Assembly (NCBI RefSeq): GCF_035084215.1
Contig: NC_090340.1
Coordinates: 15,066,001-15,130,000 of the forward strand
DNA length: 64,000 nucleotides
Direction: 5' to 3'
Origin: Heptranchias perlo
Taxonomy: Eukaryota
A program made the position numbers and the translations under genes. Numbering within the stretch: the stretch's first letter is position 1; the number at the start of each line of letters is the position of its first letter. A model generated the notes under the pieces. That model was not told where the DNA came from, ran no database searches, and worked only from the letters and a program-made list of their open reading frames with translations. Shown here piece after piece: positions 35,973 through 63,179 of the stretch.

Positions 35973-36027
35973 ATGTCGACAAGTATGATGTTTCTGTGCT
36001 TGACGCTCCGGGGGATTATTTACACAG
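35973..36027 (+). CDS. Gene A exon 1, signal peptide MSTSMMFLCLTLRGIIYT
   Basis: Hydrophobic leader, donor ACAG|gtacc in phase 1, same 55-nt length as gene B exon 1. Confidence 0.85.
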
Positions 36028-39000
36028 GTACCTCTTTATTCACAAGAACAGCTAATTTAATTTATAAAAGGATTCCGAAATAGTTTCCACATAAATGCAA
36101 TGAACGTAATTCCTCTATTTAGATTCATTTTTTCTCTCTTCCATCTCCATGTCGTATCTCATACAATTAACCCGGACTTGACTACATTTTCTGACAGCTG
36201 CGGACCACACTTCGTTCAGAGTGACTCAAGTGCCCGAACAGGCGACTCTATCCAGAGGGGGAAACATCACCTTCTACTGCATATTCCCCATCTCTCAAAC
36301 CCATTCCTGGGTAAGAGTGTATTGGTGGAAACAGGGTGAAAATAAATACCTGCAAAGAAGCGCCGATAAGAGGAAACAATTTGGTCTGGAAGGTAAAGCG
36401 AGCGGTTTCTTTCAGTTAATGCGCGCGACTTTCCAAGACTCTGGAGTCTATCACTGCGCAGTGATCCGAGAGGGAACAGTCGGAGGAAATGGAACCGGAT
36501 CACATCTAATTGTGTATGGTAAGTGTGAAACACCACAGAGCGGGACTGTCGTAAAGGTATCAAACATAACAAACGGGAATGTTTTGTGATTGCGTTATTG
36601 TACAGTTTTTGACACTATAAACATTTCTGTGAAAACTTTTCGCGAGAAAGTTAAGTTGTATATTCGTGTTCTCTTTATATAACTGTCAATTACAGAGTAA
36701 AATGTAACCCTCCACTCGCAGGGTACGGCAAAATGTATCCATGTTAAGCAATTGGACTGTACCTCCAAATAAATTTATACACCAGATGCCTGAAGTTCGT
36801 AACAAATTCCAAGCGGAGTGAAAATTGTTCATATTAATGCGCGTCCCCGACCATGTACACGGCTCTTAGCCCATTTTGGATGCTCTGACTGCTCCCATCG
36901 CTGTCTCTGGGGTTTAACATTCTTGAAATTAATTCTCACTTCATGATTGGCTCGTTAGCGTCACAGATTTGAAAGCCAGCGTGCAACTAACTGTTGACTA
37001 ACGGATTCATTCAACAACGTGGAGCTCGGAATTCACAACGTCGTCACCTCACGAACCCCCAATAATCACAATACGCAAGAACTGTGGTACTGAAACCTCC
37101 TGAGGTTCAACCGAATATAGTTTCTTTCATCAATTGTCATGCTTCGGCTGTGAGATCTGTCCGATATTGACTAATACCCTCCTTTTATCATCGGCAATGT
37201 GTAGATCACTCGTCACTGCCTAAATGAGTTTAAAAAAACATGGAGGGACAGGGGACGCCAACTTTCCCCCAGGGTTTATTTGTTTAATTCTTTGGACTAT
37301 GAAACGCGACATTGATTAGCGATTGAAGCGACGTTTCTGCTCCACTATCGAGTCCAAAATTCAACGTTTTGGACTCGATAGTGCGTGTAAAATTAAACAG
37401 ATGTCGGTGACGATGAGTGATATGGATGAGGTGTGGGTAGATGATATGCCTAAAATAAAAAGGACAGGAGGCTGTGCTTTGGAATGTTGCTGTTACAATC
37501 AAATAGACCGAAGGTAAATAAGATTCATATTTAATTTTTCCCAATATTGCGCAGTAACTCGATTTTGTTCATTGTCTGTTCCGCAGCTGCCCCAACTCCA
37601 CTGAAGATTGCCTCGAGGACAGCTGAAGGGAATTCATCTGCGCCTCTGACTCTTGTGTGTGAAACGGCTGAGTTTTATCCGGAGAATTTCACCCTCACTT
37701 GGTATAAAAATGGCGTCGAAACTACAAGAAGAATAAATACCATTAAACGGCAGAACACTGAGGGGCTGTATGAAGTTTCCAGTTCTTTGGAAGAGACGCA
37801 GCCTGTCCCGAGCGGCACGAATTATACCTGTTTGGTATCTCATGTCTCCCTCGAGACTCCAGCTGTTATCACCTATACTAAATTTAACCCAGGTACGAGG
37901 CCAATGGTCCAGCTACTCTTAAATTCGCAAAGAGCTATATCTTAGAGTTTGTGCCTATTAATATGGTTCACAGAAAACTCATGGGAAATATTATCGGAAA
38001 CACCCGCCATAATGTACAACATTATTCTTGCAGATCCTGTCGGTATGTCCCCTTACTACTCGGGTTTTAGATATGCGGTGGGCGGTTTGGCGTTTCTCGT
38101 GCTCCTGGTCATCATTGGAACGCACTGCCAATTGCAGGTTAAAAAAGGTATGATCTACTGAAACCGTTTGATTTTCATACAAAACTTCAGAGAGCGGTGG
38201 AGAGGGAAAGTGAGGGTCTCCGAGTAACACAAAGGACAACTCAGTTATGACTTAAACTTGAAGGCAGTGTTATCTGATTTCAGGGAACGCCGATTGTTCC
38301 AGACAGTAATGGATTCTGATCCTCAAGAATCAGATTAAAAATAGTCCTGATTACCTGTGTATTTACAACAAAAGTTTCCACTTTGCAGCGTGATAAATGA
38401 AATGTACCGTGACACACGATCACTTTCCAAACCAGTGGGCTGTGGGTCTGCAATTCGTTTGAGTGAAGCGGTGTGAGCTTCCGGCCGGTAACGGTTGTAG
38501 ATCATTGCTGATCTCTACAGAGGCTTGGATTCAAACATTGTCGTTGCAAGAAATATCTTTGAAACCACTGATATGGAAAAGTAGTAAATATTTCAATCAT
38601 TCATTATGATTACATTTCATTAATTCACAGGTGAAAAAGATGGAACGGGATCGAAGCGACGTGAAAAGCCGGTACGTTCATTCATTCATTTCCACAAAGG
38701 GTTCAATTATGCAGAAAGATTGATATCATGGAGATATTTTACATAATCATGTCAGAACAGTTTGCCTATTTCCTAAATGTGGAGATGCCGGTGATGGACT
38801 GGGGTTGACAAATGTAAACAATCTTACAACACCAAGTTATAGTCCAACAATTTTATTTGAAAATCACAAGCTTTCGGAGGCTTCCTCCTTTCCTAAAAGT
38901 ATTTGTTCCGCTTAATGGGTCATTCAAATCGTGTTCAGAAAAATATTTGACGCTGGCAGGGAAGGAGTTCACCCTCGAGGGCGAAATTGGCTTTCAGAGA

Positions 39001-39493
39001 AGTAAAGCCAGCGCGGTGTAAAACGGGCGGTCAATTCGCTCGATTCGCGCTACCGCGGAAGACCAATTTCAACCCCGTCCCCATTGCGTTGCCGTTTAAA
39101 ATTGTTAAATACTAGAAAAGAAAACTGTCTGTTTCGTTGATAATGTACCTAACTAATAACTGTTTATAGACTCAATATTATTTTTAATTCGGGAAAAAAC
39201 GAAATGAATTTGTGTTCTGGAACTACCGCTCATTTAAACACTTCTGTATTGTAGAATGAAGATTGACAGCTTTAAATATGTGTTATAGTGACCACAGTAC
39301 TCACCGGTCTCAACATTTGCACTTATGTAACTATATTAATTATGGTTTCTGTACTTCATCTCTAGCCCAAGTTGTTCTGTTCATTGTTTAATCAGTATTC
39401 TGTGAACTGGTGAACTAGCCACATTACAAAACATATACTTGTTTCTGGCCCATGCAGGAAGCAAAGGCTGATATCGTTGATACGCTGCAGTAG
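35973..39493 (+). CDS. Gene A: IgSF VJ-C1 type I membrane receptor (SIRP/NKp30-like), short Tyr-free tail, TM Arg, putative activating. Exons 35973-36027, 36198-36518, 37587-37892, 38034-38147, 38631-38671, 39458-39493; 290 aa
   Basis: All introns are GT-AG with consistent phases (1,1,1,1,0) and the 873 nt join into one ORF. Exon-for-exon homology with gene B. Confidence 0.88.
36198..36518 (+). CDS. Gene A exon 2, V-set Ig domain with fused J-like strand
   Basis: ITFYC...VYWWK...DSGVYHC...GNGTGSHLIV. Acceptor ctgacag, donor gtaagt. Confidence 0.93.
37587..37892 (+). CDS. Gene A exon 3, C1-set Ig domain
   Basis: LVCETAEFYP, WYKNG, YEVSSSL and YTCLVSHVSL match the C1-set signature. ccgcag acceptor, gtacga donor. 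Confidence 0.93.
38034..38147 (+). CDS. Gene A exon 4, stalk and TM (SGFRYAVGGLAFLVLLVIIG)
   Basis: Hydrophobic run, ttgcag acceptor, gtatga donor, phase 1-1. Confidence 0.88.
38631..38671 (+). CDS. Gene A exon 5, cytoplasmic (GEKDGTGSKRREKP)
   Basis: ttcacag / gtacgt. Positional homologue of gene B 62132-62175, with similar flanking intron sequence. Confidence 0.78.
38769..38897 (-). mobile_element. Penelope 3'-terminal fragment in gene A intron 5, with TSD TTTCCTAAA
   Basis: Near-identical reverse complement of about 27741-27853. Absent from the homologous gene B intron. Confidence 0.85.
39458..39493 (+). CDS. Gene A exon 6, truncated tail EAKADIVDTLQ*
   Basis: Acceptor ttctggcccatgcag is identical to that of gene B exon 6. 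A 1-nt deletion relative to B leads to TAG at 39491-39493. Confidence 0.72.
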   Translation, partial: EAKADIVDTLQ

Positions 39494-39762
39494 GTTTGGC
39501 CAGAACCAAATAAACTCCAAGACGTAAACTTGCAGAGAAAAGGACTGTGTTCAATTGGGCGGGGTGGGAAGCGGATCAGACAGATACAGATCATCAGTGT
39601 AGCACCAAAATTCATGCGATAACGGAGAATATAAGGCTAGCTAACTCTGGTGGTGTATTATATCGAAAGCTGTTCGTGTGTTATTCTGATGATTCTTTTC
39701 AGCAGCTGTCCACAAATTGGCAAAACGACCAATTAACAATATTTCCAAACACGGGTTTACAG

Positions 39763-39825
39763 CCCAAAAAAGGCACCTTCGCGACTCTAGATTTGACAGT
39801 CCAAAAAACGGGGAAATCCAAATAA
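39763..39825 (+). pseudogene. Relic of the ITIM exon behind gene A (PKKGTFATLDLTVQKTGKSK*)
   Basis: Aligns to gene B terminal exon (LTYATLELSGSGKARKSK) with Tyr->Phe. The tttacag acceptor is retained. Confidence 0.72.
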
Positions 39826-39918
39826 AAGAGAAAGACATTGCAATATTATATCATTGAATGTGGGTGTAATTGTTTGTTTCTGCTTACATATTTGAGGAAT
39901 TCTCATTTATTTACTTGT

Positions 39919-39924: not shown

Positions 39925-40869
39925 AATGCACTTACGTTGCACATTTTTTGAACATTCTGCAGTTTTTAATAGATGACAAATCGCTGCAACGCTACATAAT
40001 TGTTTTGCTGTACCTAGTTATTATCGTGCGTAATTTCAATAAAAAGACTTTCTACGATTTCTATCTTTTCACTATTAGTGATCCTTTTTCTTCGCGAGTA
40101 ATGCTGCAAAACTTGGGGTTTGATATATGTGTTGCCTTACTGCATTCAGAAGTCCAATCCAGGCGATTCTCCTGATGTGGAAGGCAGGACGCTCCAGTCT
40201 ATGGACTCGTCTATAAACCCACTGAACCCAGCTTGCAGTTGATGGAGCATGACATGCCTTTCTCTAAACTCTATATGAATATTCATTCCGATCCGAAACG
40301 ATGCGCCCAGACAATTCCAAGTAGCTTCCAGAGGAAAGGCCCCGATTATTCTCATCAGGATCTATCTTCAAGAGGACAGAGATTCTAGAGAGTTCTGAGG
40401 CAAGCAACAATAATGAATCCGGAAATGGCAATTCAGTTGTGAGGAAAGCCCCACGAAGCTGAATGCATTTCATTGGCGAAAATACCAAATTGAAATGGAT
40501 TCAGGTCTTTAAAATGTAGAAAGACGTGGATAAGATAGATATAAGCAGGTTGCATGGTTTAACGCGCAACCAGAGGCTCGGAATTAACAAGCCTCAGGAA
40601 AGAGAATAGAGCTACAACCATTTAGCTCTTTAAGCGTGGCTCCCTGGTCAGCTGAGGGAAAATTGTAGTTTGAATGGATAAACTGTCAGCTATTTAGGAA
40701 TTAGATCACTTCAATTACAGGGTGAGGACGAGCTGGTTACTGGAAGAACAGCAGCCCAGCACTTCCAGAGACTAAGCCTTTAACTCAGAATTCAAAGATA
40801 ATACAAGACGAAATGAATGAGTTGCATTTTATTTCGCCTAACTGCCCTGGTTTGATGACTGTGTCCATC

Positions 40870-42150
40870 ATCACACGTTTAATAGTCCTAGAATGTTACA
40901 GTGCAGAAGCAGATCATTGGGCTCTTAAAGTCTGTACCTTTTATCTCTCCATATGAACCACTTAATTTGTACTACTTTCACTTTAGATTCCAGCAATCTT
41001 TAATATCCCTCTTTTCAAGCAACTAATTCCATTTTAAAAGAAGTCCTGGGCTGGGTTTGTGGCAGAGAAGGCCATATCCTATTCTAACCAGCCTCTGTGT
41101 AGTGAGTATATTAACGCTCCCTTTATTTTATAAGATTATGTTCAATTTGTGATCAGTCGTTACATTCTACTGATCAATGGAAAAAATCTATCATTATTAG
41201 CTTAACATAACGCCTCAAAATCTGAAAACATATATCAGGCCACTTCTTAAACTTTTGAGCTCAAGTGAAAGATGTCCAAGATTCTCAAATAATAAGAACC
41301 CCACATTCCTGGTAATTAAGCCTGCCTCATTTCAATTGTTTTTTATATGTTTCCATAGTTTTAGAAAAACTCTTTCATGAGTTGAACATACCCTCTTTGA
41401 TTTTGTGTTCTATGCCACCAAATACTGAGCCAGGACATTCCATTTGCATTTTTATTTTATGATGAACTTCTGCTGCCATCATTCTTTAAGGTCCCTCTGC
41501 TGCTCTCCATTTAAAATCGTATAATTTAAGATACATTTCCCATTCTTACCTCCAGAAATGTACTATTTCACATTTCTCTCCATTCGCCATTGACCGTCTA
41601 TCTGCCCTTCGAACTAACGATCGATTTCGCCTGCAGGATTTCACAATCTGCATCGGAATGTCCTTCCTGCCTCCCCATTGATTGTCATCAGCAAATTTTA
41701 ATGTTGCTCCCTCAATTCGCCAGTCAAGATAATTAATCTTTATAATAAATAAAAGCAGCCCAACACAAACCCCAGGGGACACCTCTCGGTACATCTTTCC
41801 ACTCCGAGAAATGTCCTTTTACCATTACACTTTGTTTTCAGTCCTCCAATCATCTCTCTATCCCTGCGGCCAAGTTGTCCTTACTTCCACGTGCCTTTGT
41901 CATATGTGGTATCTTGTCAAATACTTTTTGAAAATACATACAATCTACATCTGCGACATTCACTTTTTCTATTATCTCTGTTATTTCTTCAATTCATTCT
42001 ATAAATCAAACTTGATCTGATTTTTCGAAATCCGTGTTGCCTGGACTTAATCAGCTCAAGTTTCGACAAGAACCTATCAGTTTTATGCCGACCGACGCAG
42101 GTCCTGCAAAATGCAAGCAAATGTGCAACTGTTTACCTGTCATTTTATGT
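40870..42150 (-). mobile_element. Old CR1 LINE
   Basis: LLLFIIKINYLD..KFADD..EKCEIVHF. Confidence 0.7.
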
Positions 42151-45100
42151 TTCAGGTTGCTTCACATTCTATTTTCTCATCTAATAACAATTCGTTGGCT
42201 TCGAGATGGAAATTAGGTCAACGTGGTATAGATTATTTTGATAATTAGTTAACCGAAAGTGACACATTCATGCAGTGCGTTCTACCAGTCCTGTGTGCTG
42301 ATAAAATGTAAGATATCAACCGAGGCGTTGACTAGTCAGGTTTTAGCTGCACGAGATGTTTTGCTAAATATTGACACTAGCGAATAGTTTTCTCAAGCAA
42401 AATAAACACATGGCTCAGCAGTTCAGCTCGAAGCACCAACTGTTCAAAGTTTAAATTTAGCTTTGTTAATTGCAACATCACGAAAACGCATCGAGTGTCT
42501 AATAATGGCGGTTATTAAACACCACCTTTCAATGTAATTGTGATTAGATATGATGTTCACATTTAACAGAGATACGATTTCACATTTGCCTTTGTAACAT
42601 CTGCTATCCGAATCAATAGCACAGCCAACAATATATAATCGAACTAAGGCGTTCCATTCTTTCCTATTTCATATTAATTGTAAGGCAAGCCGCAGAAGTA
42701 TTTCCTAAATGCACTTTCTGGGGCTTTATTGATTCATGCGTATACAAGTACAGTTAATTTAGTCAAATCCATGACATTTGCCATAATTTCTTCATGTACC
42801 ACAATATTGTGACATTGATCGCATGGGCTTCCAAATTATACGGTTTGGATATTGCCCAAAATGTCAACAGAGTTCGGTTAAAATGAAGCGCATGTTATTT
42901 AATCGCCCCATAATAGAAACCATTTTTAAATGAATGTTACTCGTTCAAGTTGTTCCTATCACGGTGTTTCCCGCCTGAAAACTGAAGATTGGAGGTGATA
43001 ACGGAATGGGTTTTGTAAATAATTTCAAAGGCAGCATCTGACCGTCCCGCTCCAACCACGTCAGGGCAGAGGCAAGAAGTCCGCATTCGGGATATCATAG
43101 AAAAGGCACATCCATACGGAATTCCTGCTCCCAGGCAGTCGGGAACCAGCAGTTTAGGACCATAAGAAGGGGTGAATGGAAGACAGCAGTAAGTGGAAAG
43201 GTAAAACACTGAAGGAATATAAGACAAATCGGTTACGAATATCTGCGTTAGAAGACACAGAATCGGTGGAGTTGATACACGTTTTGAGAAAGTAAATGTT
43301 AGCGTGGGATTAAAAAATAAATGATTGGATCGTGACTATTGTTTTACGACAATAGAACTAAATTTTAATTATTTCCCCTTTACACCCAGTACCAGCACAC
43401 GGTCACATGTCGCAGATAATGTATAGACCAGATCATTTTAAGTGTTTGAATATGAATTTTAAAGGCATTTCATAATGGGCATATCTAGTATCATTGTGAA
43501 TACATGATAGGGGCGTTAAGAGGTGATTTCAGCGTGTTATATTGTAACAACCTATACTCATTTATTTTCCATCTTTTTATCCAGAAGCAGCATTACAGAA
43601 TGTAAACAGTTACCGAGTAATGTTACAAATGCAGTTCGGTCATCTAGTTTCAAGTTTGCCTCGTCTTTTCCATAACCCTTTTCAAACTTGATGATGAGCT
43701 GCACCACGTTTGGACCTTCGTTTGTCATATGTGACAACACCCGTTCACCCACATAAGCACGATTTCGACTGAGTTTACCCAGCACTGACAGAAACCTGAG
43801 AGTTGGTAAATTCAAGAATGCCAGCAGTCCACAGTCCACAAAATCATTTGAGGTATTTGATGTTAAACTCGAACTTTAGTTGCCTTAGTGACTGATTCTG
43901 CACTAATGGTTCAATTGTTCAATTTGAAATTGTGTTATGGAAATACAAATTTACAACAAAAGGCTGCATATTTGAGAAAAACGTAACATATAATATAGGA
44001 ATCAACTTGTGTGCACAGGTCAAACCAGGGAGACTCAAAAGCCTAAGACAGTGGCCACACTTGACCTTTCGCAAACTGACGATTTTAATGACGACGGCAA
44101 AATAAAACACCGACCATTTTGATTGGAGAATGTCAGTACACGCTATCACGAAGATTGCATTGCTGTGTCACACTTGCATCTGATTTGCTTGTTAGGTTTT
44201 TGATAAAAAGCAACAAATTAGAACTGAAAAGGTAGAGAACGCCCAAATCAAACATTAGAATGGTGGTTAGAAGCACCACAAATGGGGAATTACTAAAAAC
44301 ATATTAAAATAATAAAGCATGAGCAGTGAGTAAAATCTTCAAATAAAATAGAGAGGAACCAATAAATTGCTCCATTTTTTGAAAATCCTTTGTTTTTTGT
44401 TCCACCACTAAGATGAGAGCTTACGCTGGAAATATTCAAACCTATTGACACAATAGCATTTTCTGTGTTTTCAACAGATTCTGAGAACGTTTCGGCTGGA
44501 AGTTTGCACCTCTCTGAGAAGCCTGAGTCAACAATGTAAGGGCTTGCCAGAGATATCACTCTTGTCATCTGAAATCAAGCCCCAACAAGACAGGAGAATA
44601 CAGCTCCCACCTGCACTGCTGCGACTGATTTTACCAGCCTGTGTAGAGAATTGCGAGCATGCACTTACAGCTGCTTCCTTTCTGAATCCAATGAGCACCA
44701 TCTGTCAGAACATGCTACGAATTGTGGTCTGTAAACACATCCTTTGTCCCTTTGCAGCAACGAAAGAGGCATTGCTGGGGAATGATCGAAGTGAAACGGT
44801 AAAGAAGCCTTTATTTTCCTCATCGAATACTTTAAGAGTAACAGCAAGTTTTTACATGGAACATTAACGCAATGTAAAGCAGGAACTTTTGAACACTTTC
44901 TTAAGGAACTATATTCAACCGGTTAGTGATTTAGGTCACTATCGATATTACATATTTATTGGTTTATATAACTGTTTTATGCGATTGAAACAAAGTGATT
45001 TATTTACACCTCCTGCAGTGGGTGAGAAAAACGCCATTTGATTGATTAATTAATTGTTAGTTCAATTAGTAATTTTCAGGAAGCAATTCAAACAGTTGCT

Positions 45101-45769
45101 TCAAAAACTCTCACGAACTTCTTTCCAATTCCGTCCAATGGCGATATTCACCTCTTTGACATGGAAACTTAATGGCAGAGGTTCCTTTCACCCTAATAGC
45201 AAGCGTCCGAAATGCGTTTGACCAGTTCTTTCTGTGTATGGGTCACAGAACCAAATGGCCCTGCTTGGAACCAATTGTCACTCTCACTGAGAGAAACCAC
45301 ATGGGAGCATGGGAGTGAACAAAGTCCTACTGGTATACTTGCCAGCGTTCTACTCAGGTTTGGACTGAGCCATTTGCTTAGCTCCATGCCTGCTTCCCTT
45401 CTGGGTGGTGCTGACACCATAAAATGTCCTCTGTTATCTGTAACGGCATTGTAAACCTATTCGTTATAAATGGATTCGGAATGTTGTTCTATATCAAACA
45501 CGGTGAATAACCACATAAGTCAAACAGGAAATAGTTCCACTCCCCAGCCCTCACATCCTTCGACTCGATTAATGCAACATTATTCCTAACAGATTTTAAA
45601 AAGGAGGAAGATGGTGTTTGACGTTCAGTTCTCTTAAAATCAGAAATATTCAAAATCAGATTACACTACGGTCGTGCACTTCAGCTGTTCAGTAAAAGTA
45701 GACACAGAAAAAATATTGATACAATGAATCGCTTAGTGATGTGCAAGTATTAACAGTGTCGTCATATGT

Positions 45770-46150
45770 TCAATAGCTCAACGCAAGATCGAGGAACAGC
45801 ACCTCATCTTTCGATTAGGCACTTTACAGCCTTCTGGCCTCAAAACTGAGTTCAACAACTTCAGATTATATCCACCGCTCCGATTTTATCGGACAACATG
45901 TCCTGATTATATTTCCACTGTTAGCATTTACACTTTCTCTCGACCCGTTTTTTGTTTCTTCATTTGTTCCATTACCACCGCCATTTACCATTCACCATCA
46001 CCCCTTTTGCCATTTAATCACTCCTGCTCTCCACCGTATCACAGACTTTCCGCTTTGTTCTTACCTCGCCCCTCCCCCCTCCCCCCTCCCTTTTTTTGCC
46101 TGGCTCTGTAATTCCTTACAAACTGTTAAATTTCTAACTTCTTCCAGTTA
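45770..46150 (+). mobile_element. Penelope-like 3' fragment of a different family
   Basis: RKIEEQHLIFRLGTLQPSGLKTEFNNFR, the C-terminus of the GIY-YIG region. Confidence 0.7.
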
Positions 46151-49050: not shown

Positions 49051-49644
49051 CAGCTGATTAACTATTTACTGCCACTGACTTGCAGATTCTGTTAACTGCT
49101 ATCTAATTTGCACATTTTCCATAACAGTAGAACTTTGCATAATATCCTATTCTTTACAACCTTTGACTCATTGTGAACAATGCCACAAGAGATTCACTAG
49201 TTATGTATAAAACAAATCTAACAGCTTTGCATAGGTCACGTCTCCTTCATCCATTATAAATATATCACTGTACATGATTAATAGAAACAGCCAAAATAAA
49301 CTTGTCACACTGCAGGTACACCATGTCACCAGTGAAGTCTCTACTGCGCCAGGACAAGCAAGAAAGTGTAATTAGAGATTGACAAGTTTAACTTGGCAGT
49401 TTACATTATAAATTTGGGTACAAGAATTACTATGGAAAATGCAGAAAAAATAAGACGTGATATATGACTTTAAAACGTGATTGAATATCTATGTGCACAT
49501 TCTGGTCCAATTATAAGCTGCCGATTAAATCGTTTTAATTGAAGACAACACATGGCCTTGAATCTCTGTCTGCAAAGCCACGGGCAGTTAATTAGTAATA
49601 TATGAACAATCTTACATCTACACATATTTCAAATATAAATTCCG

Positions 49645-55050: not shown

Positions 55051-55829
55051 AAGATTATTTCTTCACTTTTATCACAGGAACTACCTAAGTAAAGTTATTA
55101 TTCTGTAATGATATGCGCCCACGAGTACTGCACTGCCTCAGTTTTGCACCTCGCTGCTCCGCAGCCTGTACTTCAGCATAACTCCAATGCCCCGACTGCT
55201 CTGGTTTCTAATTTGTCATAAGTTTTGCTATTTAACTGTGAATAATTAGACAAAATAAAAGTTTATGTAAATAAGGACAGAATTTATGATTTCAATATGG
55301 AGATTGAATTAATTCTGCGTGACCTGGGTCATTTATTTCTCCACCATCAACCGCTCCTACACGGAAACACCACCTTGGTCTTGGCTCCCTGCCACAATCT
55401 GAAATGCTGAGAATTGCTCCTGACTCCATTCTCAGCGCGCCCGGACCACAACCGATCTGCGAGCTCTCCAGTGTTTCTTCACTCGTCCAGTTCATTTCCT
55501 CTGTTGCTATTTTTGATTCTTCTTCTGCGCTGGCCGAATCTGGCTCTGTTGGTGTAAAGAATTGGGCGCTGCAAAGTTTGAATTCTTCATTTGGGATCGA
55601 CTACGAAGGAGCGGACTTTCGGCGTTGGGAACAGGCTGAAAATGTTTCGGCGTGGAATGCCCAGGGTGCAGAAGTGACCTCCCCACTTATTCCAGCGGTC
55701 CACTCACTCGGTCCAAGTATTTTCACGAAAATCGTTTCCGAGATGTTTGAAGTATTTATATTTTATCTTTTTTTTTGTTACACTAAAAGGACACTTATTT
55801 TCATTGTCTAATGATGGCCTCTCTGGGGG

Positions 55830-56140
55830 CTTTCATTCCCGGCGCGACACACCACTCTCGAACTCACAATTCCTCTAATTCCCACCTCTTATGCGACCCC
55901 TCCCTTTGTCCTACCATTGCTGACCATTCTTTCGGCCGTCAAGGCCCGATCTTCCACACTTTCCTCCCTAACATCGTCTCCTTTAAGAGACTCCTTAAAT
56001 CCCATCTCTTTGACCAAGCTTTCGGCCGCACCTGGTATTGTTTCTTTCTTTAGTTCGACCTCTGTTTTTTCCTTCCGCTTTTGCGAAGCCCCATGAGACG
56101 TTTTCTTCAATCATAAAGGAGCTACAAAAATACAGATTCT
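55830..56140 (+). mobile_element. L2 3' tail fragment
   Basis: FKRLLKSHLFDQAF and L2 tail. Confidence 0.7.
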
Positions 56141-57105
56141 TGTGGGTTTCTGGTTTTGATTGGCATCATTCGGTACTCTGCATACTTGAGCAAATCCATC
56201 AGGTAAGCTAAAGGGAGAGTGATTATTTGAATCAATCAGAAAAGTATTAGGTAATAATTTTGGGAGTAATGCACTTACCTACATTTTTAAAATGCATTGT
56301 TCATGGACATGTGAAATATGTGAGCCCTTTAGGATGGGGAAGCCTCCCTTGCACTTGACGCTCGAATGAGGAGAATATTACCGTTCCTTATTAACATATT
56401 TTGGCCATTGAGCTCTTGACCTGGACGCCTAATTGGCGCACGGCTCTTGTTTAACTAGCTGACATATCCGCTATCAAATCAACTTGCACAGTTTAATCAT
56501 TGCCGCCATTAATTTGCTCCAAACATTTTTGGCAGGACGCGCTGTTAACTGGAAATTGCATTTGCAAACACGCCCTGATCTCGGCAGCTGTCTAATAGGA
56601 TCATCAAATCTCCATTTACTCACTGCTAAATAAGGTGATTACAATGTAAAAATGGACCTTCGGCCTTTCTCTACTGTAATTTAAAGAACAGATTAGAAAC
56701 GATCTCTAAAATTTCCCAGTCTGTACAGATTTGATATTTTTACTTTATTGTGTGACGCGTGCAACCTAAGGGAGGTGTATTTGTCTCACGATATTCACTA
56801 CAAGGAGCTTGGTCATTCCACATCTTAATCTCGGACAATCCAATACGATGCTACGATTGTTGGTAAATTCTCCATTTGAAATTCGGATATTATTTTTTCC
56901 TAATCCTGTGTTAACCGTGATATAGGCGATTGCAGTGGCTGCTTCGGAACAAAACGGTCAACAAATCTCACTTCACAAATGAAACCTATTCTGAATCTGC
57001 AGACACAGGATGTCAAACGTCATTGCAACGCATTTCGGCTTAAATAATCAGCAGGCCCTTCTTACTGTGGCAACAGTCAGTGATCAGTTTAATCTTTTGC
57101 TCGGA

Positions 57106-57160
57106 ATGTTGTCGAGTCTGATGTTTCTGTGCCTGTCTCTCCGGGGAATTAGTTACACAG
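57106..57160 (+). CDS. Gene B exon 1, signal peptide MLSSLMFLCLSLRGISYT
   Basis: Paralogous to 35973-36027, donor ACAG|gtacc. Confidence 0.85.
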
Positions 57161-60100
57161 GTACCTGTTATTCTCTATCCCATCTGTCTCAATAAATAAA
57201 ACATCTGAAGGAGTTATCATATGAATTGAATTAGATTGATATCGTCCATCTATATTCTTCTTTCTCTAATTTATTTCCATGTACAAATATTTTCTAAAGT
57301 GTCTGGTTCCACATAGAATATAAATAACCAAATGTTTAAAATATTTTATAACAGCTGCTGCACGTATTTCTCAAACTCCCGAAAAGATGATTGCATTAAG
57401 GGGGACAGACATCACCTTCTACTGTGTAATCCCCCTCTCTCAGGACAACTCAGGGGTAGAAGTGCGTTGGTGGAAAGGGGGTGAGAACGAATATCTGCAA
57501 ACAGGCGCCGATAACAGAAAACGATTTGGTGTCAAAAATAAAGGAGCCGGTATCTTTGAGCTGCGGAACGTGACTTTCCAGGACTCTGGAATCTATCACT
57601 GCGCAGTGATCCGTCAGGGAAGAGTTAGTGAAAATGGAACGGGCTCAAATCTAATTGTGTGCGGTAAGTGACTGGGATGATCGGGAACTTCCAAATTTAT
57701 CAGATGTAACAAGAGGTCATTTTGCGATTGTTTCATTGTAAATTTTTGACGTATAAAAAAGTTATTTTAATACATTTACATTCAAACTCAATGTTACTCC
57801 GATGTCTCTGTACACAGCTGCTAATTACACGGCATAATATGGCGCTTCATTTGCTGAGTGGTGTGAAATTCCATCAATATTAACCAGAGTAAGTAACATA
57901 TTACTGGATTCATCTCAAAATGTAGTTTCTACATCAGACTTCTGAGGAGGGAAGGTGCGGAACAAATTCCAAATATATTGATGACTGACTGAAAATACTA
58001 TATATTAATGCACCTCTCCCGCCATTTATACGGCTCTTACCTTGTTTTAGGTGCTCTGTTTGTCCCCGTCACTGTCGGAGAGGTTTAACGGTCTCTGCTG
58101 AAATTAATGCTCAGAAAATGACAGGCTGGTTCGATTGGTGGATTTCAAATCAGATGCAATTAACTCAACAATCGATGGATTCAATCAACAAACGGGACCA
58201 CGAACCAAAATTTCGCCGCCTCTTTCGCCTCCAATAAATAAAATATTCCGCAGAGACTGAGCGGCTGAAACTTTCTGAGATTGAATGGAATGTAATTTCC
58301 TTCAGCCATTCCCATGCTCGGGCAGTGTGCACTGCCCGATAATCATTTGGTCCCTCCTTTTATTCTCGATAATGTACAGACTTTCCGTTTCTCTCTTGGG
58401 GAGACAGTCAGACAGGGCCAGAGTTACGAACAAACGGGGAATGACTGAGAATGGCATCAATCGCTCATATCTTACGTTTAATATCTCCCCAGTAACCTGA
58501 TTTTCCCCATTGTCTGTTCGACAGCTGCCCCAACTCCACTGAAGATTGTCTCCAGAACACCCGAGTGCAAATCGTCTGCCTCTCTGACTCTTGTGTGTGA
58601 AACGGCTGAGTTTTACCCGGAGGATTTCACCCTCACTTGGTATAAAAATGGCGTCAAAACCACAACTGGGATAAATATCACTAAACGGCAGAACACCGAG
58701 GGTTTGTATGAAGTTTCCAGTTCTTTGGAAGAGACGCAGCTTAAGCGGAATGGATCTGTTTACATCTGTTTGGTAACTCATGTCACCCTCCAGGAACCCG
58801 CCATTGTAACTTACACTGTAAGCAATTCCAACCCAGGTAAGAGGCCAACAGGCCAAGAACTGAGGTCAGCTACTGTTAAATACTGAAAGGGTATTTCATA
58901 GAGTTTGTTCATATTGATAATCATAAGATAATTTGAATTAAATTCCCGGGAAATCGGACAGAAAATACATGTTTCAATGTAATATATTATTTACCCGAAC
59001 CTGTTGTAAAAACGGAAGTAATATTGTCGCTCTCCACCCAGAAACTGCCAGTGAAACCTCGACAGCTTCCAAATTGTTTAAAAAAAAGTATAAGCAGGGA
59101 TTTTATCATTTGTATCCGATTATTTTATGTCTCTTGCGTATTACTAAACATTTAAATTTGTCCGCTTGTTAAAGTGTTTTTATTCTATCGCATTATATTC
59201 TTTCCTTACATGAGCTGCGGGACCAGGAGCTGCAGTTCGGTGTCTACCACCGAGCCTCTTCTGGTGCGGCTCCTGATTCCGAGCTCGGTTGGGCGATATT
59301 GTGAATGGGTTAGAAATCGACCTTGTGGATAGGCCGTAACCTGACCCCTCCATGATACAGAAGTTTGGAGCGGGATACCATTTCATTCCTTTCATTCAGG
59401 CCCTGCCCCAGATCTGTCTGTACTACAACCGGGTGCAAAGCATCGTTTTATTAACAACCATTTTTCTGTAATTAACAAATACTCGTGTACTTGTTTCCTT
59501 TCCTATTCAGTGACAGTCTTATTTCGGTAGATACGCTGCAGGTAATTGAATTGGCATTTAAACTAATTGAAGCAACCAGCCTTTTTTCTCAGGCAATGGC
59601 GAGTCACATGTCACTGACTGGCCCTGATTTCAGCAAACAGCTTAAGACCAGAAGAAAAGTCAATTCGAAGAACAAGTCATTCGGTCCATCGTAACTTATT
59701 CCTCTAGAATTCTAACTCTCCCAAATCAATCTTCAGAACACCCTAAACTGATTCCCTCCGTCGCAGAATATTCCGGGCATGTGTCGCCCTTTGTGACAAG
59801 GAGCTCCTTTTGATATCAGTTCTAAAAAGATAAATTAAGATTATTTTCAAATTCCCACGTTCTCGTGCTATAATGCGGAGTTACTGTAAATATGAACGGT
59901 AGTTCAACCAACAAATTATCCCGACGTCTCTATTTAGATAACGCCCGCCACAAATTAGAACTCTTTGTTCCTTTTAATCTTGCAGATCGTGACTGTAAAT
60001 ATCGTTACCTCTGGGGTGCTGGATGGGCGGTGGGTGGATTGGCGTTTCTCGTGCTCATGATCATCATTGGGACAAGATGCAATTTGAAGAATAAAGGTAA

Positions 60101-63100
60101 GTGTAACCTTAATCGTCTTATTTTCAGAAAAATCTTCAGAGGGATAGTAACAGCATCCTGGGCGGCACAGCAGGAGAAAAGTGCGAGTGTTATTTAAAGT
60201 GCAGGTGATATTATCTGATACCAAAGGAATAGAGACTACCGCTTGCTGCAAATGGCACTAAATTCAGCATCTTACAATGCAAGAATTCTCACAGAATCAT
60301 ATTATAAAGGATCTGATTATCTGGATATTAATAATGGATATTAATATCCACTTTGTGGCAGATAAGTGAAATCGGATCGATTGTTTCATCAATTTGCGGG
60401 TCCCTGACTATTTTGGGTAAAGTGGTGTCAGTGTCCAATCGGTGTCGATGTGCACGACTGCTGATGGCTTCAGGGACTCGGATTTACAATACAATCCGGA
60501 AAATGTGATATCACAAAATAACTGCGACGAGGAAGACCATTCGGTCGATCTTAATTCGTCCACCCAGATGAAAATGTTCCCCCAATGTAGAATCCAGCTG
60601 TTTGTTAAAGGATCCTGGGACTTTTGCCTCCTTTGCCGTACCTGAAAGTTTATTCCACATGTTGATCGTTGAGAAGGAGAAATTCCTGACATCATTCTTA
60701 AAATTATCATTTACTACTTTTGTCCCCCAGTACAGCACCCACAGTTAAATATTTAGTACTATATGGGTACGGTAGTGTAGTGCTTATGGTACTGAACTTT
60801 TAATCCTGAGGCCTGGATTTATAATCCAGAGAAGGTGATTGAAACAGCGCCATGGCATTTTGAGAACTTGAAACCAGTTTTTAAAATTTGGAAATAAAAA
60901 GCTGGTTTCCGTGAAAAAGCAAGTGACCGTGAAGCTGCCGGATTGTCATAAAAAGCCAAGTAATTCATTAATGTCCTTTGGGGATGGAAACCTGCCGTCC
61001 TTACTCGGTCTGGCCTATATGAGACTCCAGTCCCACACCAATGTGGTTAACTCTTAACTGTTCTCTGAAGTGGTCTAGTAAGCTAATCAGTTGTCTCTAA
61101 CTCAAGACAACTAAAGATGGAGAATAAATGCTGCCCTTGTTGGCCACACCACATCCTGAGAATGAATAAAGCAAAAATGTGGGTTAACTTTATGCGCTCA
61201 ACATTCTTATATATTTCCATAAGATCACTGCTCAGACGCCTAATTTCCAGGCTAAAAGATTAAGTTTATTCGGGGTTTCTTCATAACTCAGTTCACTGAC
61301 ACTGGGAAACCAGCCTGGTGGCTCTTCTCTGCACCGCCGCTAGCGCTAACGCTTGTTCATCAGTGACCAAAACTATTCTCAGTATTCAATGGACCATGTG
61401 ACCAGAGCACTGATGCCAGCTTTTTCTTTCCAAATTTCAAATACTGGTTTCAAGATCTCAAAATGCCATGGCGGTGTTTGAATCACCTTCTCTGGATCAT
61501 AAATCCAGGCCTCTCGCTTAAAAGTTCAGTAACATAAGCACGACACTACCGTACCCTTATATTGCTATATATTTAACTGTGGGGACTGAACTAGGGGACA
61601 CTGGTAAAAAGTAGCAAATGATAATGTTAAGAATGATGTCAGGAATTTCTTCTTCACAACGATCAACATGTGGAATAGATTCCCAATAACAGCAAAGGAG
61701 ACAAATGTCCTAGGAACCTTTAACAAACAACTGGATTCTACTTCGGGGAGCATTTTCATCAGGGTGGATGAATTAAATTCTACTGTTTTGCCTATGTAGT
61801 TCAACGTCGTATTGGCTTTGTCCACTGCTGCTCTGCTTGGATGGACATGTGTTTAGCGTCCAGTCTACTAAGACTCCTAAATCTCTTTTAGTTCCATCCT
61901 TAGCTATTTCAATGCAATCCATGGAATACATGTATAGTTTAATTTTCCTTCCCATCAGTCGTAATCTACTCTTCTCTGCATTGAATTTCATCTGCCATTG
62001 CTCTTCCCACCAATATATCTAAATTCATGTTAAGCTTAACATTGTTTCTAAAAATACTTTTGAAAGCATAAACATGGAAACTGAATAAACATTTTAATAA
62101 TTGAATGTAATCAAATATCATTCATTCCCAGGTAAACAGGAAAGTGTAACAACACCGCACCGCAATGAAGAGCTGGTAGGTTCATAACATTCATCCAGGA
62201 AGAGGGTTCGAATTTAAATAAATATTATTATGATGGAGATATTTCATCAAAAGTATTTGTCCCTCTTTGATGCGTCATTCAAATCGTGTTTTGAGAATTA
62301 TTTGGCACTTGTTGCGATGCTGGTGTAACTGGTTAAACAAAGGATAAAAACAAGGTATGATGGTAGCTTTATTCAACATATACATAGGTAATAATTACTG
62401 GTAAATCCATCTAATCGTTGCTTTTGGAATCTGATATTACACGTCTAAGATTCTAAAATTATCTCTTGTTTAATCATATCTGTAACACTGCATGGTAGTG
62501 AAAATTGACAGGTTGGAATGTGAGTTACAGTGGACACACGATTTACCGGCCTTAATATTCGTACATTTTTAAATATATTCACTGTGGTTTTATTTGAAGT
62601 CCCGATCATTCTGTGCAATATTCCATCAGCAGTCTGTAAACTGGCGAAGGCAATGAACTAGCCACATAACAAGACAATTTCCTTCTGGCCCATGCAGGCA
62701 GCAGAGAATGAGATAGCGCCTTATGCTGCATTAGATATGAGCAAAGCGAAGAGAACCCCAGGACGTAAACGTGAAGAGGCGAGGGCAGTATACGCTCAGG
62801 TAGGGCCGAGAAGCAGATAAGGGAACATAGACCACCACCGTGGCACTAACATTCATGTAATAGCGGAGTATTTTGGATTGTGCTGACTTTAACCGTGTAT
62901 TGTATCTAAAGCTATTTGTGAGTTATTCGGATGACTACTTTGAGCAGCAGTCCACAAACTGTTAAAAAGACCAATCAACAACACTTCCAAACATTGGCGT
63001 TTCAGGTAAAACAAGGAAGAGCCCGTGACAAGCTGACGTACGCGACTCTAGAATTGTCTGGCTCCGGGAAAGCGAGGAAATCTAAAAATAACCGGCAAAG

Positions 63101-63179
63101 CACAGAATATGCCGAGCTTCAGGGGAAAAAACAAAGAAGAGTAACAGAGGTCGTCTACACAGAAGCAAGAACCAAATAG
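57106..63179 (+). CDS. Gene B: IgSF VJ-C1 type I membrane receptor with ITIM/ITSM tail (SIRP-alpha-like), putative inhibitory. Exons 57106-57160, 57355-57663, 58525-58836, 59986-60096, 62132-62175, 62698-62799, 63006-63179; 368 aa
   Basis: GT-AG introns with phases 1,1,1,1,0,0 give a 1107-nt ORF. Tail motifs APYAAL, AVYAQV, LTYATL, TEYAEL, VVYTEA. Confidence 0.9.
57355..57663 (+). CDS. Gene B exon 2, VJ Ig domain
   Basis: ITFYC...VRWWK...DSGIYHC...NGTGSNLIV. About 58/98 aa identical to gene A V by hand count. Confidence 0.93.
58525..58836 (+). CDS. Gene B exon 3, C1-set Ig domain
   Basis: LVCETAEFYP, WYKNG, YICLVTHVTL. gacag acceptor, gtaaga donor. Confidence 0.93.
59986..60096 (+). CDS. 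Gene B exon 4, stalk and uncharged TM (LWGAGWAVGGLAFLVLMIIIG)
   Basis: ttgcag acceptor, gtaagt donor, hydrophobic run. Confidence 0.88.
60510..62015 (-). mobile_element. Old CR1 fragment in gene B intron 4, containing the SINE and an inverted duplication
   Basis: WQMKFNAEKS, RDLGVLVD; inverted arms 60551-60905 and 61416-61776. Confidence 0.7.
60764..61150 (+). mobile_element. tRNA-headed SINE sharing both ends with the 32200-35457 LINE
   Basis: GGGTACGGTAGTGTAGTG head and caactaaagatggagaataaatgctg...gaatgaataaa tail. Confidence 0.75.
62132..62175 (+). CDS. Gene B exon 5, cytoplasmic (GKQESVTTPHRNEEL)
   Basis: ttcccag / gtaggt, phase 1-0. Confidence 0.78.
62698..62799 (+). CDS. Gene B exon 6, cytoplasmic with APYAAL and AVYAQ(V)
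   Basis: catgcag / gtaggg, 102 nt, phase 0-0. Confidence 0.82.
63006..63179 (+). CDS. Gene B exon 7, terminal, with ITIM LTYATL and ITSM-like TEYAEL
   Basis: tttcag acceptor, lies within ORF 62931-63179, ends at TAG. Confidence 0.85.
   Translation, partial: VKQGRARDKLTYATLELSGSGKARKSKNNRQSTEYAELQGKKQRRVTEVVYTEARTK

What the first reader, a model, noticed from the sequence alone, without database searches (positions are those of the whole stretch)
35973..63179. Tandem activating/inhibitory paired-receptor system of VJ-C1 IgSF genes in a probable shark
Seen: two adjacent paralogues share exon structure and ectodomain. Gene B has TM YLWGAGWAVGGLAF (uncharged) and five tail tyrosines, including LTYATL (ITIM) and TEYAEL (ITSM-like). 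Gene A has YYSGFRYAVGGLAF, with Arg where B has Gly, and no tail tyrosine. Known: ITIM/ITSM tails recruit SHP-1/2, as in SIRP-alpha and Siglecs. An Arg near the TM N-terminus couples to FcR-gamma/CD3-zeta in NKp30, NKp46, LILRA and FcaRI. Inference: this is an NK/myeloid-type paired-receptor family with opposite signalling, possibly uncharacterised in this lineage.
Basis: partly seen in the sequence, partly recalled or inferred. Interest (0 to 1): 0.85.

Follow-up and report, generated by a model that had tools for sequence, protein, structure and literature searches.

The report
Shark inhibitory/activating antibody-like receptor gene pair
Two neighbouring shark genes encode antibody-shaped cell-surface receptors, one with a brake-type signalling tail and one with a charged membrane anchor and a wrecked tail, and they belong to a large shark-and-ray receptor family that I could not find described in any paper.

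Summary
Two + strand genes have the same exon plan, with canonical splice sites: leader, germline-joined VJ exon, one C1 exon, TM exon, tail exons. Protein identity is 60% (V), 74% (C1) and 63% (TM).

Gene B has an uncharged TM. Its tail has five tyrosines in two ITIM-x22-Tyr units, laid out like the SIRP-alpha SHP-2-binding peptide.

Gene A has Arg where B has Gly. Its tail is cut by a 1-nt deletion, and further lesions lie in the relics of the old ITIM exons. Its upstream exons are fully intact.

Both belong to a family found almost only in cartilaginous fish (sharks, rays, chimaera). RefSeq names the members inconsistently: SIRP-like, tapasin-related-like, B7-like.

Arg occupies the same TM column in eight database proteins from six other species. 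Seven of these eight lack a tail Tyr-x-x-[LIV] motif in at least one isoform. They sit among ITIM members in the V-domain tree.

The paired-receptor reading is therefore supported for the family, with four limits:
- A and B are not each other's closest counterparts.
- Expression was not shown.
- Adaptor and phosphatase coupling are inferred.
- SIRP or PRARP membership could not be settled.

The scan has already noted this family elsewhere in this genome.

The parts
35973..36027 (+). Gene A leader exon (MSTSMMFLCLTLRGIIYT, phase 1 donor)
   Evidence: 89% identical to the first 18 residues of H. perlo P0166 and P0169
36198..36518 (+). Gene A germline-joined VJ exon (V-set; J-like NGTGSHLIV)
   Evidence: Pfam V-set 7.5e-9; 88% identical to P0166/P0169; family signature in alignment A1
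37587..37892 (+). Gene A C1-set exon
   Evidence: Pfam C1-set 9.7e-14; 84% identical to P0166/P0169
38034..38147 (+). Gene A stalk/TM exon with Arg at the N-boundary of the hydrophobic core (..YYSGFRYAVGGLAFLVLLVIIGTHC..)
   Evidence: the stalk and Arg motif is nearly identical in S. canicula P0006
38631..38671 (+). Gene A cytoplasmic exon c5
   Evidence: canonical splice sites; homologous to B 62132-62175
39458..39493 (+). Gene A last coding exon c6: 1-nt deficit relative to B, frameshift, stop TAG at 39491-39493; AATAAA follows about 15 nt downstream
   Evidence: DNA-run contigs agree with the assembly here
39494..39825 (+). Decayed relics of the ancestral ITIM exons c6/c7 of gene A: a stop in the old frame, VYAQ changed to VFNW, donor GT lost, 18-nt deletion, LTYATL changed to GTFATL, TEYAEL part absent
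   Evidence: global alignment with B, 273 of 385 aligned bases identical
57106..57160 (+). Gene B leader exon
57355..57663 (+). Gene B germline-joined VJ exon
   Evidence: Pfam V-set 8.6e-10; best match P0003 of Heterodontus francisci, 77%
58525..58836 (+). Gene B C1-set exon
   Evidence: Pfam C1-set 1.2e-13; PDB matches Ig CH/CL, UrIg2 and SIRP-alpha d2
59986..60096 (+). Gene B stalk/TM exon, uncharged core, one stalk Cys
62132..62175 (+). Gene B cytoplasmic exon c5
62698..62799 (+). Gene B cytoplasmic exon c6: APYAAL then VYAQ, tyrosines 23 residues apart
   Evidence: 62-65% identical to the tails of P0166 and P0177
63006..63179 (+). Gene B cytoplasmic exon c7: LTYATL (ITIM) then TEYAEL, tyrosines 23 residues apart; then VVYTEA and the stop
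   Evidence: 70% identical to the tails of P0166 and P0177

Best explanation
Genes A and B are two tandem members of a large family of non-rearranging VJ-C1-TM receptors found almost only in cartilaginous fish. The family is built on the paired-receptor principle.

Gene B is an inhibitory member. After ligand binding, its two ITIM-x22-Tyr units would be phosphorylated and bind the tandem SH2 domains of SHP-1/SHP-2-type phosphatases. This step is inferred from the motifs.

Gene A is an activating-type member that descends from an ITIM-bearing ancestor. It keeps an intact ectodomain. It has an Arg at the outer boundary of its TM helix, and its ITIM exons have been lost through a frameshift and later decay.

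The Arg would pair with an acidic TM residue of an ITAM adaptor of the FcR-gamma/CD3-zeta type. This step is also inferred.

A and B are not a matched pair. A's ectodomain lineage has its own ITIM-bearing counterparts.
For: - Gene structure and motifs are confirmed.
- Tail layout: B has LTYATL-x-TEYAEL and APYAAL-x-VYAQ, each with 23-residue Tyr spacing. The SIRP-alpha SHP-2-binding peptide DITYADLNLPKGKKPAPQAAEPNNHTEYASIQTS has 24 by my count (methods passage of PMC5589908).
- Gene A's coding exons are maintained. All 24 invariant or near-invariant columns of alignment A2 are present in A by my own reading of its translation. All 10 splice sites are canonical. There are 0 frame-breaking indels in 837 nt. 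About 10 would be expected from the intron rate of 8 per 672 aligned nt (Poisson P about 5e-5), or about 5 if only A's lineage drifted.
- dN/dS between A and B is 0.61 for V and 0.36 for C1.
- The tail relics, by contrast, carry at least 5 lesions.
- The stalk and Arg motif VGMSxYYSGFRYxVGGLAFL is shared with catshark P0006.
- Arg lies in the same aligned TM column in P0006, P0180/P0068, P0157, P0012, P0048, P0036 and P0032, from six other species. ITIM members have G, I or V there (species).
- Association of a basic TM boundary with Tyr-motif-free tails: 13/5 against 13/29, p = 0.0045.
- In the V tree, a clade with SH-aLRT 97 holds A, the ITIM proteins P0166, P0169, P0170 and P0008, and the Arg proteins P0006, P0180, P0157 and P0012. 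The Arg-without-Tyr label needs at least 6 changes on well-supported branches.
- The AlphaFold2 model of P0166 puts the homologous column 8 residues inside the TM helix 235-268.
Against: - No expression evidence. Three small runs guessed to be RNA cover only an intronic repeat, plus one piece in the C1 exon of A.
- The hydrophobic core after the Arg is only 17 residues. The Arg sits at the boundary, so it could snorkel to the interface and need no partner.
- TM dN/dS is 1.2 over 36 codons.
- Phylogenetically independent contrasts number only 4 (3.4 of them in the expected direction; median p 0.25).
- Short tails in database proteins may partly be truncated gene models.
- Of B's five tyrosines, only LTYATL fits the strict ITIM consensus. 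TEYAEL has Leu at +3, not the Val or Ile of a strict ITSM.
- A and B share only 60% of V residues, so they probably do not share a ligand.
- No adaptor or phosphatase was examined.
Confidence: 0.6

Rival explanations
1. Gene A is expressed but has no signalling role. It would be a tail-less decoy or adhesion receptor, like SIRP-gamma, which has a very short tail and binds no DAP12. Its Arg would simply sit at the membrane interface.
For: The Arg lies at the very edge of a 17-residue hydrophobic core. The tail is 33 residues with no known motif. The SIRP review describes such a member of that family (passages of PMC12975943).
Against: Arg recurs in the same TM column together with truncated, largely Tyr-motif-free tails in several shark and ray lineages. 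Extracellular-side Arg runs against the usual charge distribution of type I TM segments (established knowledge).
Confidence: 0.17
2. Gene A is a pseudogene, or a gene on its way to becoming one. The tail decay would be the first visible stage, and the intact upstream exons would reflect slow shark mutation rates or gene conversion from functional paralogues.
For: There is a frameshift and at least 4 further lesions in the tail relics. There is no RNA evidence. TM dN/dS is 1.2. Close paralogues or orthologues (88% in V) exist that could act as conversion donors.
Against: There are 0 frame-breaking indels or stops in 837 coding nt, where introns of the same gene pair predict about 5-10. All splice sites are intact. 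All family-invariant residues are kept. The specific Arg-bearing stalk/TM sequence is conserved with a catshark protein. An AATAAA lies just after the new stop, so the truncated transcript need not be degraded.
Confidence: 0.15
3. A and B are the two chains of one heterodimeric receptor, TCR-like or PRARP-like, and not independent receptors with opposite signs.
For: They are tandem genes with the VJ-C1 architecture of antigen-receptor chains. By my recollection of the abstract of Fu et al. 2019, chicken PRARP products can form disulfide-linked dimers.
Against: Only B has a stalk Cys; A has none. The family is large and dispersed, with many ITIM-only clusters. V-domain identity of 60% and the interleaved tree fit independent receptors.
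Confidence: 0.03

Closest known systems
SIRP family (SIRP-alpha / SIRP-beta / SIRP-gamma)
   Same: - VJ-type V domain followed by a C1-set domain.
- An inhibitory member with four tail tyrosines in two ITIM-spacer-Tyr units. Compare LTYATL..TEYAEL (23 residues apart) with ITYADL..TEYASI (24 apart).
- A partner with a basic TM residue and a short tail.
- Genes clustered.
- RefSeq automatic names call many family members SIRP-like.
- Language-model features put the family member P0016 nearest to SIRP-alpha clusters (0.97).
- The SIRP-alpha V-C1 region aligns end to end with the family profile (E 7e-31, rank 5 of 8665).
   Different: - One C1 domain, not two.
- Arg at the outer TM boundary. The SIRP review says only that SIRP-beta has positively charged TM residues that bind DAP12; that the residue is a more central Lys is my recollection.
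- The V domain is not specifically SIRP-like. No SIRP V appears among the 60 best PDB matches of the V profile, where VNAR, CD79b and TCR V do.
- No bony-vertebrate SIRP was retrieved in three sequence searches.
- In the structure search SIRP-gamma ranks 42nd (Z 13.7), behind B7-family V-C pairs (Z 15-16.6).
- Orthology and CD47 binding are untested.
[quoted passage not shown] 2019 J Immunol, pmid 30770416)
   Same: By my recollection of the abstract, and from the citing passages in PMC10751288 and PMC11599192: non-rearranging VJ genes with a V-C1 structure, a potential ITIM in the tail, and tandem gene pairs.
   Different: PRARP is reported from bony fish to birds, not from cartilaginous fish (recalled). 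No PRARP sequence was available to any tool and the paper is not held, so homology could not be tested. I recall no activating Arg-TM partner for PRARP.
UrIg / UrIg2 (shark non-rearranging antibodies)
   Same: Shark genes with a germline-joined VJ exon, a split leader and C1-type domains. UrIg2 is the second-best PDB match of the family profile (5.7e-34).
   Different: UrIg and UrIg2 have many C domains (nurse shark UrIg2 has one VJ and nine C) and are single, conserved loci (section 7 of PMC12227049). Here there is one C1, an ITIM or Arg-TM signalling design, and a large multigene family.
Other paired Ig-like receptor families (KIR, LILR, PILR, CD300, teleost NITR and NILT)
   Same: Homologous ectodomains joined either to ITIM tails or to a charged TM with a short tail. 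Activating forms arise repeatedly from inhibitory ones. Multigene clusters (general knowledge; PMC3533184 and PMC3022915 seen in search listings only).
   Different: Those ectodomains are C2/I-type or V-only, not VJ-C1. None is reported from cartilaginous fish in the papers I found.

Membership tests
SIRP family | N-terminal V domain of VJ type (G strand with a GxG bulge encoded in the V exon) | tested here: met
   V-set hit. The motif NGTGS(H/N)LIV ends the V exon. G-x-G is invariant in 16 of 16 family V domains.
SIRP family | Three Ig domains: V + C1 + C1 (PMC12975943) | tested here: not met
   Only one C1 exon lies between V and TM in both genes. tblastn finds no further C1 copy in the window.
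SIRP family | Inhibitory member with four tail tyrosines forming two SHP-binding ITIM pairs | tested here: met
   B has APYAAL..VYAQ and LTYATL..TEYAEL, each 23 residues apart, plus a fifth Tyr. Compared with the SIRP-alpha peptide quoted in PMC5589908.
SIRP family | Sequence relationship closer to SIRPs than to other V-C1 proteins (orthology) | tested here: inconclusive
   For: features 0.97; rank 5. Against or neutral. No SIRP sequences were obtainable for a tree.
SIRP family | Binds CD47 | not testable with these tools
   Needs a binding assay.
PRARP | Non-rearranging VJ exon, C1 domain, TM, ITIM tail | tested here: met
   Architecture of gene B. The definition is recalled from the abstract of Fu et al. 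2019 and from the citing passages.
PRARP | Sequence homology to chicken, fish or frog PRARP | not testable with these tools
   The paper is not held and no PRARP sequence is in any reachable library under that name.
Paired activating/inhibitory Ig-like receptors (functional class) | Clustered genes with homologous ectodomains | tested here: met
   Tandem on the same strand, with about 17 kb between A's relic end and B's start. V 60% and C1 74%. A's ectodomain is 88% and 84% identical to the ITIM proteins P0166 and P0169.
Paired activating/inhibitory Ig-like receptors (functional class) | One member with ITIM; the other with a charged TM residue and a short tail without motifs | tested here: met
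   The pattern recurs in the family.
Paired activating/inhibitory Ig-like receptors (functional class) | Near-identical ligand-binding domains within the pair | tested here: not met
   A and B share only 59.6% in V. In the V tree, B is a separate long branch (0.44).
Paired activating/inhibitory Ig-like receptors (functional class) | Physical coupling to an ITAM adaptor, or to SHP phosphatases | not testable with these tools
   Needs co-expression and co-precipitation.
UrIg/UrIg2 | VJ followed by several C domains; single conserved locus | tested here: not met
   One C1 only; a multigene family; compared with section 7 of PMC12227049.

The most novel reading that the evidence does not exclude
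This VJ-C1 family is the cartilaginous-fish counterpart of the KIR/LILR/NITR type of innate recognition system. It would be a large, fast-evolving set of germline-joined, antigen-receptor-shaped receptors in which Arg-TM activating forms have been made repeatedly from ITIM forms (or re-paired by exon exchange) since before sharks and rays split. Its SIRP-alpha-like double ITIM tail would mean that the SIRP-type signalling module, and the paired-receptor principle on a VJ-C1 scaffold, date back to the origin of jawed vertebrates, close to the ancestor of rearranging antigen receptors.
Probability: 0.3. Interest if true: 0.8.

Novelty: new variant of a known kind. Interest (0 to 1): 0.6.

Why it matters
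To my knowledge, innate paired receptors (NK or myeloid type) are well described in mammals, birds and bony fish but hardly at all in cartilaginous fish, the oldest lineage with Ig, TCR and MHC.

A large family that joins an antigen-receptor-like VJ-C1 ectodomain to either ITIM tails or an Arg-bearing TM would give concrete candidates for shark NK or myeloid recognition receptors.

It would also provide a natural record of how activating receptors arise from inhibitory ones, since gene A still carries the wreck of its ITIM exons.

Finally, it adds a data point on which non-rearranging VJ-C1 genes existed near the origin of adaptive immunity.

All of this is directly testable with RNA-seq, co-expression with shark adaptors, and phosphopeptide binding.

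Tried and rejected
**Expression.** Read laying on 35700-39900 used three small runs guessed to be RNA and one DNA run, all from one sample. The RNA-like runs hold only the intronic high-copy repeat 38777-38890, plus one X5 piece in the bin 37674-37814. This is no usable evidence for or against expression.

**Bony-vertebrate relatives.**
- The search for homologous proteins with the C1 exon found 2 chimaera fragments.
- With P0016 it found 21 hits, all cartilaginous fish.
- With the 28-sequence profile A2 it found 39 hits: 38 cartilaginous fish and one bird TAPBPR-like protein at 2.3e-9.
- No SIRP, PRARP, Ig or TCR sequences were retrieved, so no tree against those families could be built.

**PDB by sequence**. 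The C1 domain is generic C1-set. The V domain is generic V/I-set with VNAR, CD79b and TCR V. SIRP-alpha ranks high only for the two-domain profile. This does not discriminate.

**Structure.** The AlphaFold2 model of P0166 has mean pLDDT 74.5 and a confident ectodomain. Foldseek against the PDB is swamped by antibody light chains. VIA-align wide gives B7-H6, PD-L2, B7-H3 and butyrophilin at Z 15-16.6, UrIg2 at 14.2 and SIRP-gamma at 13.7. It is a generic extended V-C pair, which does not discriminate.

**NCBIfam**: nothing relevant, because it is a prokaryote library.

**Other checks.**
- Species identity: no database protein matches the window at more than 88%, so I could not tell Heptranchias perlo itself from a relative.
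- tRNA origin of the intronic repeat: none found.
- Adaptor literature for cartilaginous fish: nothing useful.
- Heterodimer reading: rejected on the stalk Cys pattern.
- UrIg membership: rejected on domain number.
The supplementary gene tables of PMC10751288 and PMC12227049 might list VJ-C1 genes of this kind, and I could not see them.


Full report
**What is in the sequence**

The stretch 35973-63179 holds two + strand genes with the same exon plan.

- Gene A: leader 35973-36027, V 36198-36518, C1 37587-37892, stalk/TM 38034-38147, c5 38631-38671, c6 39458-39493 (stop).
- Gene B: leader 57106-57160, V 57355-57663, C1 58525-58836, stalk/TM 59986-60096, c5 62132-62175, c6 62698-62799, c7 63006-63179 (stop).

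Every boundary is AG|exon|GT. The leader, V, C1 and TM exons end in phase 1, as is usual for Ig-superfamily genes.

Pfam calls the second exons V-set (7.5e-9, 8.6e-10) and the third exons C1-set (9.7e-14, 1.2e-13).

Each V exon ends with NGTGS(H/N)LIV. This is a J-like G strand with a GxG bulge encoded in the germline, so the genes do not rearrange.

A and B share 59.6% (V), 74% (C1), 63% (TM) and 72% (leader) of residues. No further V or C1 copy is in the window. Nucleotide similarity continues through introns and the tail region at 66-84%. The pair is therefore an old tandem duplication (dS 0.44).

The rest of the window is mostly LINE-type reverse-transcriptase debris. Window sequence was searched exon by exon.

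**The two signalling ends**

B's TM is uncharged (..YLWGAGWAVGGLAFLVLMIIIGT RC..). Its tail has five tyrosines: APYAAL, AVYAQ(V), LTYATL, TEYAEL and VVYTEA.
- Only LTYATL fits the strict ITIM consensus.
- TEYAEL is ITSM-like, with Leu at +3.
- The tyrosines form two units with the same 23-residue spacing.

The SHP-2-activating peptide of SIRP-alpha quoted in the methods of PMC5589908 has ITYADL and TEYASI 24 residues apart by my count. PMC5413580 (passage) lists ITYADL, LTYADL and TEYASI as the SIRP-alpha motifs. B's tail thus has the layout that binds tandem SH2 phosphatases. That it does so is inferred.

A's TM exon reads ..PVGMSPYYSGFRYAVGGLAFLVLLVIIGT HC.., with Arg aligned to Gly of B. 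A's tail is 33 residues with no Tyr.

**Gene A's tail is a wreck of an ITIM tail**

A global alignment of A 39450-39835 with B 62690-63185 gives 273 of 385 aligned bases identical. It shows:
- a net 1-nt deficit early in c6, which shifts the frame and gives TAG at 39491-39493;
- a further stop in the old frame;
- VYAQ changed to VFNW;
- the c6 donor GT lost;
- an 18-nt deletion in the c7 relic, with LTYATL changed to GTFATL;
- loss of the TEYAEL part.

An AATAAA lies about 15 nt after the new stop, so c6 can serve as a terminal exon.

The frameshift is not an obvious assembly error. Contigs built from DNA run X1 cover 39048-39459 and 39430-39595 with no difference or gap, and no indel is listed there. 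However, X1 comes from one sample that is probably the assembly's own. Even without the frameshift the old frame would stop seven codons after a single V-x-YAAV.

**Gene A's other exons are maintained**

- In alignable intron segments of the A/B pair there are 12 gap runs in 672 columns, 8 of them not multiples of three.
- At that rate, about 10 frame-breaking indels are expected in the 837 coding nucleotides upstream of c6, or about 5 if only A drifted.
- None is seen, and the three exonic gaps are all in frame.
- All splice sites are canonical.
- A keeps all 24 invariant or near-invariant columns of alignment A2 (checked by eye against A's translation).
- dN/dS between A and B is 0.61 (V), 0.36 (C1) and 1.2 (TM, 36 codons).

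**The family**

An exhaustive HMMER search with B's V exon found 244 proteins at E up to 1e-3, and 84 at up to 1e-10.

Of 30 hits looked up, 28 are from cartilaginous fish. The genera are Heterodontus, Chiloscyllium, Scyliorhinus, Mustelus, Heptranchias, Carcharodon, Hemiscyllium, Hypanus, Hemitrygon, Mobula, Pristis, Leucoraja, Amblyraja and Callorhinchus. One is a multi-domain turtle protein and one has no name.

RefSeq's automatic names are inconsistent: SIRP-alpha-like, SIRP-beta-1-like, tapasin-related-like, CD276 homolog, NCR3LG1-like and Ig lambda-like. Word-indexed searches with a chimaera member and with a 28-sequence profile returned 21 and 39 proteins. All were cartilaginous fish except one bird TAPBPR-like protein at 2.3e-9.

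The closest proteins to gene A are Heptranchias perlo P0166 and P0169 (V 88%, C1 84%). They have an uncharged TM and a B-like ITIM tail. B's tail is 70% identical to that of P0166 and P0177.

An earlier follow-up note of this scan calls the genome a sevengill shark. I could not decide whether P0166 is an orthologue in a sister species or a paralogue in the same genome. Either way, an A-type ectodomain exists with an inhibitory tail.

**Is the Arg design real?**

The stalk and Arg motif of A recurs almost letter for letter in catshark P0006 (..VGMSRYYSGFRYTVGGLAFL.., five-residue tail).

In a MAFFT alignment of stalk/TM segments, Arg falls in the same column in A and in:
- P0006 (Scyliorhinus);
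- P0180, P0068 and P0012 (Hypanus);
- P0157 and P0048 (Hemitrygon);
- P0036 (Mobula);
- P0032 (Mustelus).

ITIM members have G, I or V in that column (species).

I had 199 proteins in hand. Of these, 123 were dropped: 46 without the C1 motif, 44 longer than 560 aa and 33 without a TM. The rest give 60 distinct TM cores:
- 13 have a basic residue at the N-boundary and no tail Tyr-x-x-[LIV];
- 5 have both;
- 13 have neither, and 9 of these are a separate WWIY..CCK subfamily;
- 29 have Tyr motifs only.

Fisher p is 0.0045, odds ratio 5.8. This count ignores relatedness, and some short tails may be truncated gene models.

I built a V-domain tree of 65 rows (106 columns, quick IQ-TREE). These are the 65 of 126 V domains that could be labelled; the other 61 were left out. 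The tree shows:
- a clade with SH-aLRT 97 holding A, the ITIM proteins P0166, P0169, P0170 and P0008, and the Arg proteins P0006, P0180, P0157, P0156, P0012 and P0158;
- elsewhere, near-identical V domains carrying opposite ends, namely P0043 (Arg) with P0046 (ITIM), and P0048 (Arg) with P0173 (ITIM);
- at least 6 changes of the Arg-without-Tyr label forced by well-supported branches.

With phylogenetically independent pairs only 4 are available. The Tyr motif goes the opposite way in 3.4 of them on average. The sign test cannot reach significance (median p 0.25).

In the AlphaFold2 model of P0166 (mean pLDDT 74.5), the TM helix spans 235-268 and the column homologous to the Arg is residue 243. 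In A the hydrophobic core after the Arg is only 17 residues. The Arg is therefore at or just inside the outer boundary. By recalled knowledge, that is where the acidic residue of FcR-gamma/CD3-zeta-type adaptors lies, rather than the mid-membrane position of DAP12 partners.

**What it is like, and whether it is a member**

The design works like SIRP-alpha/SIRP-beta: VJ plus C1, a four-Tyr inhibitory tail, and a partner with a basic TM and a short tail (passages of PMC12975943).

Membership in the SIRP family is not shown.
- There is one C1 domain, not two.
- The V profile does not pick SIRP V domains among its 60 best PDB matches; VNAR, CD79b and TCR V do appear.
- The two-domain profile ranks SIRP-alpha 5th of 8665 (7e-31), but Ig heavy chains and UrIg2 rank similarly.
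- Language-model features put P0016 nearest to SIRP-alpha clusters (0.97), which is only a lead.
- The structure search favours B7-type V-C pairs (Z 15-16.6) over SIRP-gamma (13.7).

PRARP shares the VJ-C1-ITIM plan (Fu et al. 2019, recalled from the abstract and seen only in citing passages). No PRARP sequence or text was reachable. UrIg and UrIg2 are excluded by domain number (section 7 of PMC12227049).

**Novelty**

Six full-text searches found no paper on this family. They combined PRARP, non-rearranging, SIRP, ITIM and paired-receptor terms with shark, elasmobranch, cartilaginous and elephant-shark terms. Supplements were closed and might hold gene lists.

The genes are in RefSeq under automatic names. 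This scan has already noted many members elsewhere in the same genome, including another Arg-TM gene 36 kb beyond this window.

The principle of paired receptors, with activating forms born from inhibitory ones, is well known. New here are the lineage, the VJ-C1 scaffold and the readable decay of A's ITIM exons.

**Verdict**

My confidence that A is an adaptor-coupled activating receptor and B an SHP-recruiting inhibitory one is about 0.6. Interest is 0.6.

Noticed in passing
window 12954-13222 (+): An orphan exon-like stretch reads ..ERFLVRLYLGLLVILVLTGIIVEHAKS.., with a stop just upstream. It matches a third TM type of the same family, with Arg before the core and Asp/Glu-His at its inner end plus a short tail, as in P0060, P0024, P0029, P0072, P0076, P0110 and P0171. 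No V or C1 exon is nearby.
   Followed up: partly
window 38777-38890 (intron of gene A); also 27740-27861 (-): A short dispersed repeat of very high copy number: summed contig depth above 1e5 in all four runs, and 96% identical to a second copy in the window. ARAGORN finds no tRNA-like part.
   Followed up: partly
family proteins P0031, P0058, P0163-P0165, P0183-P0187, P0191: A distinct subfamily has the TM motif pWWIY..LLLLII..CCK(F)CKCK (a palmitoylation-like Cys cluster) and a tail of mostly 73-78 residues with few or no tyrosines. It forms its own clade in the V tree and is named NCR3LG1-like or Ig lambda-like by RefSeq.
   Followed up: partly
P0043 (Leucoraja erinacea) vs P0046 (Amblyraja radiata); P0048 (Hemitrygon) vs P0173 (Mobula): Nearly identical V domains (branch lengths 0.01-0.1) are attached to opposite ends, Arg-TM with a short tail against uncharged TM with an ITIM tail. 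These are tighter pairs than A and B.
   Followed up: partly
window 57661-57663, 58560-58565, 59994-59996 (gene B): Gene B has three cysteines that A lacks: the last residue of the V exon (LIVC), PECK in the first strand of C1, and RDCK in the stalk. The stalk Cys could make a disulfide-linked dimer. Both genes keep a juxtamembrane Cys (GT[HR]C).
   Followed up: no
window 36482-36490 and 57627-57635: An N-glycosylation sequon (NGT) sits inside the J-like GxG motif. The majority consensus of the 16 aligned family V domains reads GNGTGS there, though a few members lack the sequon. A glycan at this spot is not something I recall for a V domain.
   Followed up: no
window 1-35600 and 40000-56900: Mostly broken LINE-type elements: RVT_1 hits at 1781-2563, 6554-7381, 13666-14466 and 33254-33715(-). 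An inverted 340-bp repeat lies at 35125-35460 and 60762-61094 (73%). Some database gene models of the family (P0024, P0161, P0116) contain transposon-derived pieces that match these.
   Followed up: partly
window 35865-35972: An in-frame upstream ATG at 35865 extends gene A's leader ORF by 36 codons. The ATG at 35973 matches the start of H. perlo P0166 and P0169 and was used.
   Followed up: no
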